Shown: positions 17,946-22,924 of the stretch, piece by piece
Layout: every line of letters begins with the position of its first letter
Position numbering within the stretch: position 1 is the first letter of the stretch
Source of the DNA: Selaginella moellendorffii
Taxonomy: Eukaryota; Plantae; Lycopodiophyta
DNA: 64,000 nt
Reading direction: 5' to 3'
NCBI RefSeq assembly: GCF_000143415.4
Contig: NW_003314269.1
Span: 1,220,623-1,284,622, forward strand
Notes under the pieces: generated by a model
The model's input: only the letters and a program-made list of their open reading frames with translations
What the model was told of the DNA's origin: nothing
Database searches by the model: none
Made by a program: the position numbers and the translations under genes

Positions 17946-19183
17946 TGTGTCGGCTGAGCATGACAGATCCAAGCGATTGATGTAAACACCGGCCCCTTTG
18001 ATTACAAGCAAGGCAATTGCGGGGGCGAGCAGGAGATTCGTTGCGAAGATGCTACAAGAAGAATAGGATGTTCTAGAATACACATAGATTGATCAAAACT
18101 GGAGAAGCTTAATTGTTTGTTTGCATTCGCGCATATAATAACTGGAGCCAACGTGGGCCATGGTGAAATTATAAAAGCGTGCACCGTCCGCGTGGGGGTA
18201 TATGCGACAAGATGCCCCCAGTACCGTACGAGAGAGAGAAAAGGTGGTGGGCATGGGCATGGGGGAAAGAATGAATGGCAGCATAGCTTTTAGATTGTGT
18301 GGTGTGGTGCTAAAATGGAGGAGAAAAGAGAGTGAAGAGACCCCACGCCTTTGAGATGGCATCATGGGCTGCTGATGATGCCATGCATGGCGTGCACGCA
18401 TCATTTCACATACGCAACTTTGAAGGGGTTTGTTGTTTGTTTGTACAAGGAGGAACTGTCCAGTGTGTTTGATGTTGAAGCTCCAACTTCCATCTTTTCC
18501 ATCTTCCATCTCTTCCATCCTCCATCCAGCCAGAGAGGGGTCTACTAGCAAAATAAATTCGATTAAACTTGGCTTGTGATGCAATAGTCTAGAGACATGG
18601 AGCTCAAGATTCCATGATCGACAACAATTCCCCATAGTTGGTTGTTTCGTTTCTCTCTTGGAAGTCACTCTCTCGATCCAGCTTGGAACGGGGTCTCTCT
18701 CTCTCTCTCTCTCGCGCGCGCGGTTATCCCTGTAGCAAGCTCGAGATGCTTAGCTTGGACGAGTCCTTGCGACAGAGGCTGGACGAATGCTCGCGTCGCG
18801 TCTCTGCGCGTTACACTTTGTCGTCCAGTCTTGCGTCAGGAGTAGACATACGGAAGAATCACAAGGACGCCAGGCCGGAGTGAGAGCAAAAAGAGAGGAA
18901 AAGAATCGTGTAAGGACATGACAAGCGCATAGCTAACGGCCATGCTTATGTCATACTGTGACGCTTATCAGTAGTACACAGCTTATGTGGAGAGAGAGAC
19001 GACACTATGGTGAGAAAAAAGAAAAAGACGAAGGATGAGAGATGAGAGACGAAAGACGAAGACGAGAAAGAAAAAAAAAAGAGAAACGCTCGAAGTTTCG
19101 GAGAGAGGAAGAGTTTTTTTTACCTCTCAAGAAGCTGCGAATGATGATGGCGTCCCACGTTGGTACGTCTCGCCGGCTATTTC

Positions 19184-21894
19184 TCAGGCGTCCACTCGGA
19201 GCTGATCGTCGAGAGAAGCGATCTCTTGGAAGAAAGCTCGGAAGTGGCGGAAGGCGGCGTCAATATCTTCCGTGCCGCACATCTCTCGCACGCTGCAAAG
19301 CCCCCAGAGAGTCAGCCAGCGCGAAAGATATAATTCCCAATCATGGAGCAAACCTGTGCATCGCGAGCTGTGGAAGACCGCAATCCACCAAACGGATGCC
19401 ATATCCTGCCGCCAGCACTGAATCGATGGTCGAGCAGCATCCAACGTCACTGACCACGGAATAGTTCTGCGCGCAAGAGAAAGCGTTAAAAATGAGAGAC
19501 ACAGAGCGTGGACGAGTCGAGGCTGACCTGTGTCGGAATACAATTCCGCTTGGCGACCTCCTTGAACAGAAACGCAGAGATCGCGTCTGTCGCATTGTTC
19601 TGTGTTAGATTGTGTTTGATTACGAGACCGTCGTGGAGTTTTGGCTGGTTGTGCTCCACATCATTCTCGGCATTGTTGGGATGCAAAGCATGAGCCATGT
19701 CTGCAGATACTGCCACACAACACAAGGAAAAGAAAAGAACAAAAAGTTAAACACAACCCTTCCTCAGACTCTGTATGATGCGTACCAACAAACGAGCGTC
19801 GGATTGCTCGCTCTACAACGCCTTCGCTTGTAGAACCGCGAGCCAGCCATCGTGATATCCTCATCATGGCCTGGAACATGGTCTGTGGACCAGCTCCTTG
19901 AACGGCTTCTGATCCAACCTGAAATCTCCCATGTAAAGTCAAAGTTCGAAAAAAAGAAATACAAAAACAATACCTCTCCATTGTCGAAGAGTGCAACCAT
20001 GCGGATGTAATCCTCATCCAGCATCGACAGCGGTTCAGAAGACGTATCCAGCAGAGCCCAGAGAGCGCAGAAAGCCGACGCCAGGTTGTCCAGCCTTCCC
20101 GAAAACACAAACTCTTGACGAGCACCTCCGATGCATGCAGGCTGAGTGTCGTAAATGCTCAGCTCAAAATCCGCGATTTCACTGACATCGCAGTGAAGCT
20201 CGTCTGCGAGCACCTGAAAAAGTGTGACTGGCTGAATGCCAGGGCAAAGAGTTACCTGCAAAAGAAGAGGGTGGTGGACGTCGTTGCTTTGGTTTCCTTC
20301 ATGCTCACCCGGCGACTCCGAGTCACAAGAAACAGCCAGTTCTGCTTCAATTTGAGTAGCAAGGACTGGAGCTAGTTGGGACTCCAAATCTTGCTTCATA
20401 CTGTCTGACCTGTAGAGAAAATAGTTTGAGCAAGAGTGTCAAGAAAGACGAGACAGACCTGTCCATATGAAACGCCAAACTCGGGATCCGCAATATTGGC
20501 CTTCGAACACGAACAAGATCATGAATAAGCTCTCCATTTTTTGTTCTACGTAAAACCCGCCCGGCGACACTTAAATCCCTGTCAAACCAGGTATTCCATA
20601 GTCCAGTCCCATAAGCTTGGACTCTAACACGTAGAAAACCACCTTTAGTAGCCGCAGATACTGGTTTAAGCTTTGGACAGGGACTATCTGTATGAGCAGC
20701 CAATACATGAAAGCCACCACCGGGTTTATACCTGCACATTGACATCAAGCCATGCATTAGTAAATGGAAAAGGAACAAAGATGAGAAGAAGATGCGTACT
20801 TCCGACCAATGGCGAAAGCAAATATCGAGGACATATTTCGCGTGAAGAAATAGCGACCACCTGGCTGTAACTCCCACTCTTCACACTCGTTCAGCTGCTG
20901 GAAGCCTGATTCCAGCAAATGCCTCCTTGCCTCCACTGATATAAGTAAAACCCCGCATCAGTACCGGGAGAGAACTTACACGAAGTCACCAGATGGTGCT
21001 CTCACAAGTGGCATGAAAAGGTGTCGTAGAGTTGTTCAAGAACTCTATGAGATTTGGAACAACTGATAACGCGTCGCGACCAAGGAGAGCCTGGAGAAAA
21101 ACAAAACAAGGTGAGTAAGAAACAAGATCCAGTCGCGAAACAATACCTGCCTTTTCCGGAAAAAAACCTCTCTGATGGCTCGGCCCAGCGCCAGCCAAGA
21201 AGCGAAGATCGGCCATGGTGGGAGTCGGCTGCGAGAGCGCCAAGTTTGGGTGAACCTCGGCCTGGAAGCTACTTTCATCCACATCGACACCTTCCGGCTG
21301 CTTGGCATCACCATTCACTCCATCGTAGTGCACGTCCCCGGATCCTCCGAGCATGGCCATCCCATTCCCGAGCTGTGGAGACGCGAGCAAGGTCCGGGGC
21401 AGCCCCAGAGCAGTGGTGGCGGACGACTCCCTCGCGCGCTTGGGCCTCTTGGCGTTCTTCTGTGGACAATTCACGCACATCGCCTCCCCGGTCTTGGCTC
21501 GGCAGTGCCAGCAGTAGAGATTTGGTATCTGGATCCACTTCCCCTGGATCTCGTCAAGCTGGAAGAAGCTCTTGAGATCCACGTTGAGGTGGCGATTGAT
21601 GCAAAACCGGCAAAACCACCGCCTCCGGCGCTCCCCCTTGGTGTTGGAGTGGCCCGAGCAGTCGGGCGCCGGGCAGATGAAGAGGCCGCCGAATTGCCGG
21701 GTGGAGTTCTTCACCTTCCTGGAGATCCAGTCGCGAGGCCAGCCCTCACCGCGCTCCAGCTGCTTGGCCGCCTCGGCTGGAGTGGTGGTGTGGTGGTGCG
21801 TGCACCAGTGGCACGCCGCGCGGAGCTCCGTGTTGAGCTTGTTCCACAGGCCGTCGTCAATGAGGAAGGACGGCGCGCGCAGCACCTCCTCCAT
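19184..21894 (-). CDS. Cys-rich zinc-finger + NLS fused to an M18 aspartyl-aminopeptidase-like domain (catalytic Glu substituted)
   Basis: ORF 21894-20986 has five Cys pairs and runs without a stop into LIEFLNNSTTPFHA; downstream exons AHTDSPC, WFDRDLSVAGR, SGRLDNL, FDNGE|VGS, SADMAHALHPN, QLAMH|SVREMCG. Confidence 0.8.
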
Positions 21895-22255
21895 TGGGCC
21901 GAGAGAAAATATTTTCTTGTTCTTTGATTCTTCTTCCCTGATCGATCGATCGGAGAAGAAGAGGGATCTTTGCTGCTGCTACCAGTCGCGAAATTCCGCG
22001 CAGAATTCCGTTTGCTGCTGGATTTGCCACGCGAAGACGCTGCTCGTCGCAGTCCAGAGGCTCCCGGAAGGCGGCAATGCCATTCTTCTTGGCGCCGGGA
22101 GAGAAGATCTGGAGCGCGCTTACCTATAATGCGGTCATGGAATCCGCGTCTAGCCGGATTGAAGCGCTGCACTCCAGCCCAGAGAAGAGATCCAAGAACC
22201 CTAAAATCCTGGGAACATATTTTAGGGCTCCAGAGTTCTTGGAGAAGAGAATCGC

Positions 22256-22924
22256 ATGGCGGCCGCGGTGAAGGAGCTCCAGCGGCAGCTGGAATTGCGA
22301 GCGTCTGAGCTCAACAAGATTCAGAAAGGTATGGTGATCGCGATCGCGATTGTTGCAGGGATTCCAGCTCTAACAAGACCGATCGGGCGATACAGACATT
22401 AGCAAGAATCACCAAGTGAGGAGGCAGTACACGATCCAGCAAGGGGAGAATGAGATGGTGATCAAGGTCCGTGCTTAGGAATCGCATTTCTCTTCTAGAA
22501 CTTGAAAGTTTCTTCTCGTGAATCATGCTTGCCAGGAACTAGAGCTTCTCAAAGAGGACGCCAATGTGTTTAAGCTCATTGGACCAGTGCTCGTGAAGCA
22601 AGACCTGGTGGAAGCCAAGGCCAACGTGAACAAGCGCATCGAGTATATCACAGGAGAACTGTCAGTCCAAGCACATCCTCCATAGCTCGGAGCTTTCTTC
22701 TCACTTTTTCTTTTCTCTTTTCTTTTCCTCATAGGAGGAGACTTGACGGATCATTGAAAAGCCTAGAGGATCAACAAGGCTCCAAAAGAGAAGAGGTAGA
22801 GCATTGCAAAATCTTTGTTCTTCTCGTTTTCTTTTCCAATCAAACTCCTTTTTTTTCTCTCGTCTTTCAGGTTCTAAAGTTGCAGCAACGCTTGCAATCG
22901 AGTAAAGCTAAAGCCTCAGCGTGA
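22256..22924 (+). CDS. PFD6: Prefoldin subunit 6
   Basis: DISKNHQVRRQYTIQQGENEMVIK|ELELLKEDANVFKLIGPVLVKQDLVEAKANVNKRIEYI. Confidence 0.93.

What the first reader, a model, noticed from the sequence alone, without database searches (positions are those of the whole stretch)
19184..21894. Zinc finger + NLS fused in frame to an M18 aminopeptidase
Seen: the ORF from ATG 21894 encodes five Cys pairs (C28xxC31, C74-C79, C95xxC98, C128xxC131, C140xxC143), a basic NLS-like KNAKRPKRAR and a linker. It then runs without a stop into the first M18 helix (LIEFLNNSTTPFHA); the frame also holds if the small 21091-21150 intron is spliced at a GC donor. Inference: the CHWC...CPAPDC...FCxxC..RH...W...CxxCR...CxxC pattern resembles the zf-4CXXC_R1 domain of CDCA7 and KDM3-type JmjC proteins, though the CDCA7 RQK motif is absent. 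Known: M18 enzymes form tetrahedral dodecamers and normally carry no such domain. Hypothesis: a nuclear, multivalent chromatin- or DNA-binding cage built on a peptidase scaffold. I do not recognise this architecture.
Basis: partly seen in the sequence, partly recalled or inferred. Interest (0 to 1): 0.9.

Follow-up and report, generated by a model that had tools for sequence, protein, structure and literature searches.

The report
Zinc finger fused to dead aminopeptidase
A spikemoss gene, shared with clubmosses and mosses, joins a very strongly conserved cysteine-rich (probably zinc-binding) module to a cage-forming M18 aminopeptidase that has lost its catalytic glutamate, so it is probably a non-enzymatic scaffold whose job nobody has studied.

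Summary
RNA contigs from three independent studies give one spliced 10-exon mRNA (window 22150-19139, minus strand). The 722-aa product is letter-identical to the RefSeq model 'probable aspartyl aminopeptidase [Selaginella moellendorffii]'.

The same fusion is annotated in Diphasiastrum and twice in Physcomitrium. It is colinear in every moss locus that is long enough to judge. The Cys domain (aa 1-157) is the best-conserved part: 74-86% identity between lycophytes and mosses, dN/dS 0.07 or less. The M18 part is 59-75% identical.

The M18 domain is complete and keeps all five metal ligands. The general-base Glu (human Glu301) is Gly, Ser or Pro in every locus that shows the position, so this is an ancient pseudo-peptidase. 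This agrees with the scan's other note on this same stretch.

The zf-4CXXC_R1 idea stays a lead. The motif order is the same and it is the top protein-language-model hit three times. However, there was no Pfam or PDB sequence match, only 10 of the 11 signature Cys are present, and AlphaFold2 models were too poor to compare folds.

Nuclear, multivalent chromatin binding is plausible but untested. No paper describing this architecture was found.

The parts
21895..22150 (-). 5' UTR, as far as the RNA contigs reach. It holds a 34-codon uORF (22083-21979) and an in-frame stop upstream of the start codon.
21424..21894 (-). Cys/His-rich basic domain, aa 1-157 (pI 9.4). Ten Cys in the pattern CXXC-X42-CX4C-X15-CXXC-X29-CXXC-X8-CXXC, plus invariant His29 and His130. 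Probably three zinc sites. This is the most conserved part of the protein.
21430..21459 (-). Conserved basic cluster KNAKRPKRAR (aa 146-155), directly after the last CxxC. It fits the classical monopartite NLS consensus. K146, K149, R150, K152 and R153 are invariant in the four full-length orthologues.
21151..21423 (-). Exon-1 part of the acidic, poorly conserved linker. The whole linker is aa 158-250, pI 4.8, 29-40% identity between mosses and lycophytes. It carries short invariant motifs: D187..Y190-D191-G192, D206-E207-S208.F210, R231, F244.
21091..21150 (-). Intron 1: 60 nt, GC-AG, phase 0. It separates the exon encoding the Cys domain and linker from the M18 exons.
19229..21042 (-). M18 peptidase domain (aa 265-708; PF02127 profile positions 1-432 of 432, E 1.4e-132), spread over exons 2-10. 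Exons: 21006-21090, 20800-20935, 20459-20731, 20256-20409, 19974-20213, 19786-19918, 19528-19709, 19354-19466, 19184-19292.
19977..19979 (-). Codon GGA, Gly543, at the position of the general-base Glu301 of human DNPEP (DNEEVGS reads DNGEVGS). The RNA contigs show no difference here.
19594..19596 (-). Asn627 at the position of the P1-pocket Tyr381 of human DNPEP. The Tyr is lost in all four full-length orthologues.
19184..19186 (-). Stop codon TGA. The 3' UTR continues at least to 19139 in the same contig, and probably to about 18700 in overlapping contigs.

Best explanation
Shown: this is a real, expressed, ancient gene of Selaginella moellendorffii, with orthologues in clubmosses and mosses. 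It encodes one 722-aa polypeptide with three parts. The first is a basic N-terminal module rich in Cys and His, followed directly by a conserved NLS-like basic cluster. The second is an acidic, flexible linker of about 90 residues. The third is a complete M18 aspartyl-aminopeptidase domain that keeps its five metal ligands but has lost the general-base glutamate throughout the family.

Inferred: the M18 domain no longer works as a peptidase, or works only feebly. Like every characterised M18 enzyme, it probably assembles into a tetrahedral dodecamer. M18 N-termini emerge on the outer surface, so the cage would display twelve zinc modules on flexible tethers. The zinc module is probably a three-zinc finger of the chromatin-reader type, possibly a very divergent zf-4CXXC_R1. 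It would be the functional head, binding a repeated nuclear ligand (DNA or chromatin) with high avidity.

My odds for each step: real single protein 0.97; peptidase-dead or strongly impaired 0.8; zinc-binding 0.85; dodecamer 0.65; nuclear 0.55; homologous to zf-4CXXC_R1 0.45; binds DNA or chromatin 0.35.
For: One mRNA. Spliced contigs of 2470 nt (2469 in X7) in three runs from three studies cover both halves. The ORF is continuous and equals RefSeq-derived P0044. An independent intron-free transcript contig from another species (L010) carries one ORF spanning both domains.

Conservation. Full-length fusions are annotated in Diphasiastrum and twice in Physcomitrium. L001, L005-L008 and every metagenome locus with enough downstream DNA are colinear with the whole protein. 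Identity is 74-86% for the Cys domain, 59-75% for M18 and 29-40% for the linker between mosses and lycophytes. For the Cys domain dN is 0.07-0.18 with saturated dS, giving dN/dS <=0.07.

Pseudo-enzyme. The M18 domain aligns end to end with human DNPEP (E 3.9e-122). His94, Asp264, Glu302, Asp346 and His440 are kept. Glu301 is Gly in Selaginella. It is Gly, Ser or Pro in all loci where the motif can be read. Tyr381 is lost in all four full-length orthologues, and His170 is lost in the mosses that show the loop. Residue roles come from PMC3472314, including the finding that His170Phe abolishes activity.

Display on the surface. In the M18 Ape1 dodecamer the N-terminal propeptide emanates from the surface (PMC4931565). 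Plant DAP1 and DAP2 are dodecamers (PMC5638241).

Zinc module. It has ten Cys and two invariant His, which would give twelve ligands. Its pI is 9.4. zf-4CXXC_R1, followed by PHD, ADD and VAL1-type fingers, are the nearest named clusters for three members.
Against: No experiment bears on localisation, oligomeric state, metal content or ligand. The zinc module matches no Pfam family. It matches no zinc-finger or chromatin protein in PDB by sequence. Two AlphaFold2 runs failed (pLDDT 43.9 and 42.1), so its fold is unknown. The language-model scores (0.76-0.85, with 118-162 shared features) are below the tool's own reliability bar. The retained metal ligands and Lys374 leave room for residual activity or for non-catalytic peptide binding. 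The basic cluster could be a nucleic-acid-binding tail rather than an NLS.
Confidence: 0.55

Rival explanations
1. Non-catalytic peptide reader with a protein-interaction head. The crippled M18 pocket still binds metals and N-terminal Asp/Glu peptides without cutting them. The zinc module mediates protein-protein contacts (RING-, ZZ- or PHD-like) rather than DNA binding. The protein would then be an adaptor or receptor for proteins with acidic N-termini, or a regulator of the active DAP paralogues by co-assembly.
For: All five metal ligands are conserved in every orthologue. Lys374, the acidic-P1 determinant, is kept as Lys or Arg. Known pseudopeptidases often reuse the dead pocket for binding (PMC11266112). 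In fission yeast, zinc fingers (the Nbr1 ZZ domains) bind M18 dodecamers (PDB 7dde).
Against: The P1-pocket residue Tyr381 is lost in all four full-length orthologues. His349 is lost in Diphasiastrum and in the Physcomitrium copies, and His170 is lost in the mosses, so the pocket itself is drifting. The module is strongly basic and is followed by an NLS-like cluster, and its nearest named clusters are chromatin-type fingers.
Confidence: 0.22
2. It is still a working aminopeptidase that the N-terminal module simply delivers to a new place (the nucleus or a partner). The Glu-to-Gly change would be tolerated because another residue or a water molecule acts as the base.
For: In Selaginella only the general base and Tyr381 differ from human DNPEP among the listed active-site residues. 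The domain is full length and well conserved.
Against: The general base is absent in every locus, and the residue there varies (Gly, Ser, Pro). The moss copies that show the loop have also lost His170, whose mutation abolishes activity in human DNPEP (PMC3472314). The peptidase part evolves faster than the zinc module.
Confidence: 0.13
3. Artefact. Two neighbouring genes are joined by read-through or assembly, or it is a decaying chimeric pseudogene, or the Cys region is a transposon-derived ORF.
For: RNA contigs alone cannot prove a single molecule, as the tool itself cautions. One Physcomitrium paralogue (P0036) has lost Cys79 and looks eroded.
Against: There is no stop between the two parts. 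The same colinear arrangement is found in at least eight distinct loci from lycophytes and mosses, and in an independent transcript contig. dN/dS is <=0.07. An exhaustive phmmer scan of 1.84 billion representatives found only orthologues and two distant relatives, and nothing transposon-like.
Confidence: 0.02

Closest known systems
M18 aspartyl aminopeptidases (human DNPEP; plant DAP1 and DAP2)
   Same: The M18 domain is full length (PF02127 1-432 of 432, E 1.4e-132). It aligns end to end with human DNPEP (E 3.9e-122). The H.D.E.D.H metal ligands and Lys374 are present.
   Different: The general-base Glu301 is replaced by Gly, Ser or Pro in the whole clade, and Tyr381 is lost in all four full-length orthologues. 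About 260 extra N-terminal residues carry a Cys-rich domain instead of no extension (DAP1) or a transit peptide (DAP2). The plant DAP survey lists Selaginella and Physcomitrella DAPs of 467-586 aa only and mentions no such domain (PMC5638241).
zf-4CXXC_R1 proteins (CDCA7; plant class II DDR1-3; class III IBM1/JMJ24)
   Same: The order of motifs is the same: CHxC, CX4C, FCxxC(L/I)xNR, W..CxxCR, terminal CxxC. A Physcomitrium class II domain even reads KTCHWCRQKT...FCGPCLMNRNGE...W-LCPKCRNG. zf-4CXXC_R1 clusters are the top language-model hits for three members. Both are N-terminal modules attached to another domain, as in class III.
   Different: There is no PF10497 hit at E<=10, and no PDB sequence hit. 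There are 10 Cys rather than 11. All spacers are longer (42, 15, 29 and 8 against 10, 7, 19 and 3). The three ICF residues are not conserved. These proteins were not picked up in the published BLAST census of zf-4CXXC_R1 proteins in Physcomitrium. Membership is not established.
Fission-yeast Nbr1 ZZ zinc fingers binding M18 aminopeptidases (Ape4/Lap2); PDB 7dde
   Same: A zinc finger is physically associated with an M18 dodecamer.
   Different: In yeast the association is in trans, between a receptor and an active enzyme cargo, for vacuolar targeting. The fusion in 7dde is an engineered construct. Here the fusion is natural, in cis, N-terminal, and on an inactive M18.
Yeast prApe1 N-terminal propeptide
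   Same: An N-terminal extension emanates from the surface of an M18 dodecamer and gives the cage a multivalent binding function (PMC4931565).
   Different: The propeptide is a short helix that is cleaved off to release an active enzyme. Here the extension is a conserved 157-aa Cys/His domain plus a linker, on a dead enzyme.
EBP1/PA2G4 (M24 pseudo-aminopeptidase) and other metallo-pseudopeptidases
   Same: An aminopeptidase fold is retained under selection after loss of catalytic residues and is reused for binding or scaffolding.
   Different: The clan and fold differ (M24, monomeric). The 2024 review of metallo-pseudopeptidases has no occurrence of 'M18' in its text (PMC11266112).

Membership tests
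Peptidase family M18 (fold and family) | Full-length match to the PF02127 profile above the gathering score | tested here: met
   443 bits against a cut-off of 24, profile positions 1-432 of 432, aa 265-708. E 3.9e-122 to human DNPEP 4dyo.
Peptidase family M18 (active enzyme) | H.D.E.D.H metal-ligand signature (His94, Asp264, Glu302, Asp346, His440) | tested here: met
   H335, D506, E544, D592 and H686 align to these residues. They are present in every orthologue that covers the position.
Peptidase family M18 (active enzyme) | General-base glutamate (human Glu301, first E of DNEEVGS) | tested here: not met
   Gly543 in the window. Gly in L001, L007/8, L010-L014, L017 and P0043; Ser in L020/L023; Pro in P0036.
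Peptidase family M18 (active enzyme) | Swapped-loop His170 and the P1-pocket residues His349, Lys374, Tyr381 | tested here: not met
   In Selaginella, H410, H595 and K620 are kept but Tyr381 is Asn627. Tyr381 is lost in all four full-length orthologues. His170 is lost in Physcomitrium and in the Sphagnum-type loci that show the loop. His349 is lost in Diphasiastrum and Physcomitrium.
Peptidase family M18 | Tetrahedral dodecamer | not testable with these tools
   Inferred from human DNPEP (PMC3472314) and plant DAP1/2 (PMC5638241). No oligomer prediction was possible.
zf-4CXXC_R1 (PF10497) | Match to the Pfam profile | tested here: not met
   No PF10497 hit at E<=10 for the window ORF, P0036, P0001, P0007, P0008 or the core fragment.
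zf-4CXXC_R1 (PF10497) | Eleven-Cys signature CXXCX10CX4CX7CXXCX19CXXCX3CXCXXC (eLife 2023, RP86721) | tested here: not met
   The window has CXXCX42CX4CX15CXXCX29CXXCX8CXXC. That is ten Cys in the same order, with CX4C identical and every other spacer longer.
zf-4CXXC_R1 class I (CDCA7 orthologue) | ICF residues Arg274, Gly294 and Arg304 conserved | tested here: not met
   Anchored on the Cys motifs, the equivalent positions are Thr32, Arg92 and His102. This mapping is by motif, not by a statistically supported alignment.
zf-4CXXC_R1 (PF10497) | Shared fold with three zinc sites | tested here: inconclusive
   AlphaFold2 with 9- and 7-row alignments gave mean pLDDT 43.9 and 42.1, too low for a fold search. 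Language-model similarity to PF10497 clusters is 0.83, 0.76 and 0.85, a lead only.
Classical monopartite NLS | K-(K/R)-x-(K/R) basic cluster in an exposed segment | tested here: met
   KRPKRAR at aa 149-155. K149, R150, K152 and R153 are invariant in the four orthologues. Whether it drives nuclear import cannot be tested with these tools.
Pseudo-peptidase | Catalytic residue lost while the protein stays under purifying selection | tested here: met
   The general base is lost in all loci. The M18 domain is 59-75% identical between mosses and lycophytes. The gene is expressed in several RNA studies.

The most novel reading that the evidence does not exclude
A land-plant-ancestral nuclear 'chromatin cage'. 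A catalytically dead M18 tetrahedron displays twelve very divergent zf-4CXXC_R1-type modules. These would read a DNA or chromatin mark (for example hemimethylated or methylated CpG) with extreme avidity. The gene would have been kept in mosses and lycophytes and lost in the other plant lineages represented in the databases.
Probability: 0.15. Interest if true: 0.85.

Novelty: new variant of a known kind. Interest (0 to 1): 0.62.

Why it matters
I found no description of an M18 pseudo-peptidase. The term does not occur in the 2024 review of inactive metallopeptidases. A self-assembling tetrahedral cage reused as a display scaffold for a zinc module would be a new way for evolution to build multivalency.

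The zinc module is better conserved between mosses and lycophytes than the enzyme it sits on, yet it belongs to no Pfam family. Either it defines a new zinc-finger family, or it extends the zf-4CXXC_R1 (CDCA7) family, which is linked to DNA methylation, to a new architecture.

The question is easy to test because Physcomitrium patens carries two copies and allows gene targeting. In practice, the database name 'probable aspartyl aminopeptidase' is probably wrong as a statement of function.

Tried and rejected
**Sequence searches for the zinc module**
- Pfam hmmscan of the 302-aa ORF, of four relatives and of the core fragment at E<=10 gave only noise. The best scores were 14.6 bits (CR_prot_dom_plant, on P0008) and 13.7 bits (Ephrin_rec_like), both far below their cut-offs.
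- PDB sequence searches with profiles A1 and A3 found nothing. A 58-aa core fragment gave only chance hits to unrelated proteins.

**Fold**
- Two AlphaFold2 jobs on the Cys domain gave pLDDT 43.9 and 42.1.
- I therefore ran no fold search, because the tool warns that such models give meaningless matches.
- The ESM Atlas structure search on P0036 residues 1-165 gave TM <=0.31 to unrelated viral proteins.

**More relatives**
- A word-based search with the distant relative P0007 found only itself.
It was repeated successfully with A3.

**Profile comparison I left out**
- A profile-profile comparison against the published zf-4CXXC_R1 alignment (eLife RP86721, source data) was not run.

**Literature and gene models**
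- I could not establish whether SmDAP2a or PpDAP2b1/b2 of PMC5638241 are old truncated models of these genes. P0043 and P0036 are 73% identical in the M18 part, not the 87% reported for PpDAP2b1/b2, so probably not.
- My home-made spliced models failed for L001 and were only approximate for L007 and L005. I used them only to read motifs.

**Rejected readings**
- Transposon ORF, read-through chimera and decaying pseudogene (see rival explanations).
Full report

On the minus strand, an ORF runs from ATG 21894 for 302 codons. It also holds the basic stretch KNAKRPKRAR at aa 146-155. It then continues in frame into the first M18 helix.

More than a dozen public RNA runs hold 0.70-0.78 of the sampled words of 20700-21950. 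I laid four runs from four studies on 18700-22700. In three of them a single contig of 2470 nt (2469 in X7) covers 22150 to 19139 with nine introns removed. The fourth run shows eight of the nine joints in shorter contigs.

After shifting the joints to canonical ends, eight introns are GT-AG.

The CDS starts at the first ATG after an in-frame stop and ends at TGA 19184-19186. It encodes 722 aa. This model is letter-identical to P0044, which NCBI names 'probable aspartyl aminopeptidase [Selaginella moellendorffii]'. That also identifies the genome.

The Cys pattern is not chance. Only 16 of 20000 shuffles reach four CxxC. The Cys residues are also conserved, as shown below.

**2. Is the fusion conserved?**

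An exhaustive phmmer scan of aa 1-165 against 1.84 billion cluster representatives gave only eight hits. Six are ORF fragments of close orthologues (P0001-P0005 at 76-85% identity; P0006 at 66% over its last 38 residues). Two are distant relatives at 34-36% identity.

The genomic contigs that encode the close hits carry M18 exons downstream on the same strand. They are colinear with the whole 722-aa protein by tblastn.

A length-matched search found full-length annotated fusions:
- P0043, 750 aa, Physcomitrium patens isoform X3.
- P0036, 686 aa, P. patens, UniProt A0A7I4BIF6.
- P0045, 682 aa, Diphasiastrum complanatum.

A scan of JGI metagenomes found 16 further moss-type loci. Every one with enough downstream DNA has the M18 exons in order. 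One of them, L010, is intron-free. It carries a single 646-codon ORF spanning the Cys domain and most of M18, so it is an independent transcript from another species.

I found no case of the close-type Cys domain without M18.

**3. How strong is selection?**

In the four full-length proteins (alignment A2), identity between lycophytes and mosses is:
- Cys domain (aa 1-155): 74-86%.
- M18 domain: 59-75%.
- Linker: 29-40%.

For codons 1-123, dN is 0.07-0.18 while dS is saturated (above 1.7, or not computable). This gives dN/dS <=0.07.

All three were tested and none was observed.

**4. The M18 half is a pseudo-peptidase.**

Pfam places Peptidase_M18 at aa 265-708 over the whole profile. The domain aligns end to end with human DNPEP, PDB 4dyo (E 3.9e-122). 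I used the residue roles given by Chaikuad et al. (PMC3472314). The 4dyo chain numbering is ten higher than theirs.

The five metal ligands map as follows and are all present:
- His94 to H335.
- Asp264 to D506.
- Glu302 to E544.
- Asp346 to D592.
- His440 to H686.

The general base Glu301 is Gly543: DNEEVGS reads DNGEVGS, codon 19977-19979. The RNA shows no difference there (table 3). The P1-pocket Tyr381 is Asn627.

At the Glu301 position the family shows the following:
- Gly in L001, in most of the Sphagnum-type loci, in L010 and in P. patens P0043.
- Ser in L020 and L023.
- Pro in P0036.
- Never Glu.

The moss copies that show the swapped loop have also lost His170, whose His170Phe mutant is inactive in human DNPEP. 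The P. patens copies and Diphasiastrum have lost His349.

The loss of the base therefore predates the split of mosses and lycophytes, while the fold and metal ligands stay under selection. This agrees with the scan's separate note on this same stretch (s1-358716). A 2024 review of inactive metallopeptidases does not mention M18 anywhere in its text (PMC11266112).

**5. What is the N-terminal module?**

It is basic (pI 9.4) and has 10 Cys, 7 His and 7 Trp. Alignment A3 includes the two distant relatives. Across it, the following are invariant: C28, H29, C31, C74, C95, C98, C128, H130, C131 and C140, together with W56, W120, G69-G70-L71 and others. C79 is replaced only in the eroded P0036, and C143 is ambiguous only in P0008. 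That makes twelve candidate ligands, enough for three zinc ions. This is an inference.

Tests of the zf-4CXXC_R1 idea gave mixed results.

Against membership:
- Pfam gives no family at E<=10.
- PDB sequence searches with two profiles and a core fragment find no zinc-finger or chromatin entry.
- Two AlphaFold2 runs gave pLDDT 43.9 and 42.1, so no fold comparison was justified.
- The published signature of the family is CXXCX10CX4CX7CXXCX19CXXCX3CXCXXC. Ours is CXXCX42CX4CX15CXXCX29CXXCX8CXXC. One Cys is missing and every spacer except CX4C is longer.
- Anchored on the motifs, the three ICF residues are not conserved.
- The published census of Physcomitrium zf-4CXXC_R1 proteins does not list these genes.

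For a relationship:
- The motif order is the same and the CX4C spacing is identical.
- The local contexts resemble each other. A Physcomitrium class II domain printed in the source data of that paper reads KTCHWCRQKT...FCGPCLMNRNGE...W-LCPKCRNG. Ours reads ACHWCTHHHT...FCRFCINRHLN...YCWHCRAKTG.
- PF10497 clusters are the top named hits of the protein-language-model search for P0036, P0008 and P0044, at 0.83, 0.76 and 0.85. PHD, ADD and VAL1-type chromatin fingers follow. The tool itself rates scores under 0.9 as leads only.

My reading is that this is a chromatin-type multi-zinc module. It is possibly a very divergent zf-4CXXC_R1 (odds about 0.45), but it is not a demonstrated member.

**6. 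Basic cluster and linker.**

The last CxxC is followed by CPQK-x2-KR-x-KR-x-R. K146, K149, R150, K152 and R153 are invariant in the four orthologues. This fits the classical monopartite NLS consensus (my own knowledge), but it could equally be a nucleic-acid-binding tail.

The linker is acidic (pI 4.8) and variable. It contains a few invariant short motifs, such as D-x2-YDG and DES-x-F.

**7. How it most likely works.**

Shown: one polypeptide, an ultra-conserved Cys/His module, a complete M18 domain without its catalytic base, and expression in several studies.

Inferred:
- All characterised M18 proteins are tetrahedral dodecamers. This holds for human DNPEP (PMC3472314) and for plant DAP1 and DAP2 (PMC5638241).
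- In the M18 protein Ape1, the N-terminal propeptide emanates from the dodecamer surface and mediates trans-interactions (PMC4931565).
- The fusion would therefore put twelve zinc modules on tethers of about 90 residues around a dead cage. That would make a high-avidity binder for a repeated ligand, most plausibly nuclear DNA or chromatin.

Rivals:
- A non-catalytic reader of acidic N-termini with a protein-binding zinc head. The nearest natural precedent is Nbr1, whose ZZ fingers bind M18 cages in trans (PDB 7dde).
- A still-active enzyme that has been relocated.
- An artefact.

**8. Comparison with what is known, and novelty.**

The gene models already sit in RefSeq and UniProt as 'aspartyl aminopeptidase', with only PF02127 annotated. 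The plant DAP survey lists Selaginella and Physcomitrella DAPs of 467-586 aa and does not mention this domain or the lost glutamate (PMC5638241). I found no paper on the architecture.

I class it as a new variant of known kinds: a pseudo-peptidase scaffold plus a CDCA7-like or novel zinc module.

**Limits.** The taxonomic range (mosses and lycophytes only) rests on what the databases hold. Fold, metal content, oligomeric state, localisation and ligand are all untested.

Noticed in passing
window 22184-22700 (+ strand): A spliced prefoldin gene lies head to head with the fusion gene (Prefoldin_2, E 2.5e-12 for 22518-22685; GT-AG introns at about 22327-22393 and 22465-22533). The 5' end of the fusion gene's RNA contig (22150) lies about 100 bp from the prefoldin ORF start (22256), which suggests a shared bidirectional promoter.
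   Followed up: partly
window 21979-22083 (- strand): A 34-codon upstream ORF (MALPPSGSLW...FRDW*) sits in the 5' UTR of the fusion mRNA, in frame with the main ORF and ending 84 nt before the main ATG. I did not check whether it is conserved.
   Followed up: no
L002 274-1239 and L003 269-1567 (Logan SRR17405563): Two distant relatives of the Cys domain (P0007 and P0008, 34-36% identity by phmmer, nearly all Cys and both conserved His kept) have Pro/Arg-rich tails. They share a second conserved exon (KFDEA.L..PDPGG.RW.FK.NDHCV.LPQV) that matches no Pfam family. There is no M18 within these 1.7-kb contigs. The organism is unknown. They suggest the module also exists outside the M18 fusion.
   Followed up: partly
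P0036 / L005, L006 (Physcomitrium patens paralogue): One of the two P. patens copies looks eroded. Cys79 is Tyr, HTDSP reads HTGSP, the general base is Pro, the model's C-terminus is truncated, and the current RefSeq entry for it is a 124-aa fragment (P0034). It may be on its way to becoming a pseudogene, while the other copy (P0043) is intact.
   Followed up: partly
P0045 (Diphasiastrum complanatum model), alignment A2 columns 516-595: The annotated clubmoss protein lacks the whole exon that carries Asp264 and the Glu301/Glu302 motif. I could not tell whether this is an annotation gap or a real deletion, because no DNA was fetched.
   Followed up: no
window 21150-21900 versus 19184-21100: There is a sharp composition step inside the gene. 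Exon 1 (Cys domain and linker) is 60-67% G+C, and the M18 exons are 45-51%. This could be a 5' GC gradient or a trace of a separate origin for exon 1.
   Followed up: no
window 19059-19113: A long homopolymer-rich tract in the 3' UTR breaks the RNA contigs. It shows single-base insertions and deletions in one run (X7), probably length variation or assembly noise (table 4).
   Followed up: no
L011-L024 (JGI metagenome contigs Ga0116226-31, Ga0209208, Ga0209611): At least four or five distinct fused loci occur in these moss-associated metagenomes, and several samples hold two each. This points to paralogue expansion in that moss lineage, or to several moss species per sample. One lineage (L020, L023) has Ser instead of Gly at the general-base position.
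   Followed up: partly
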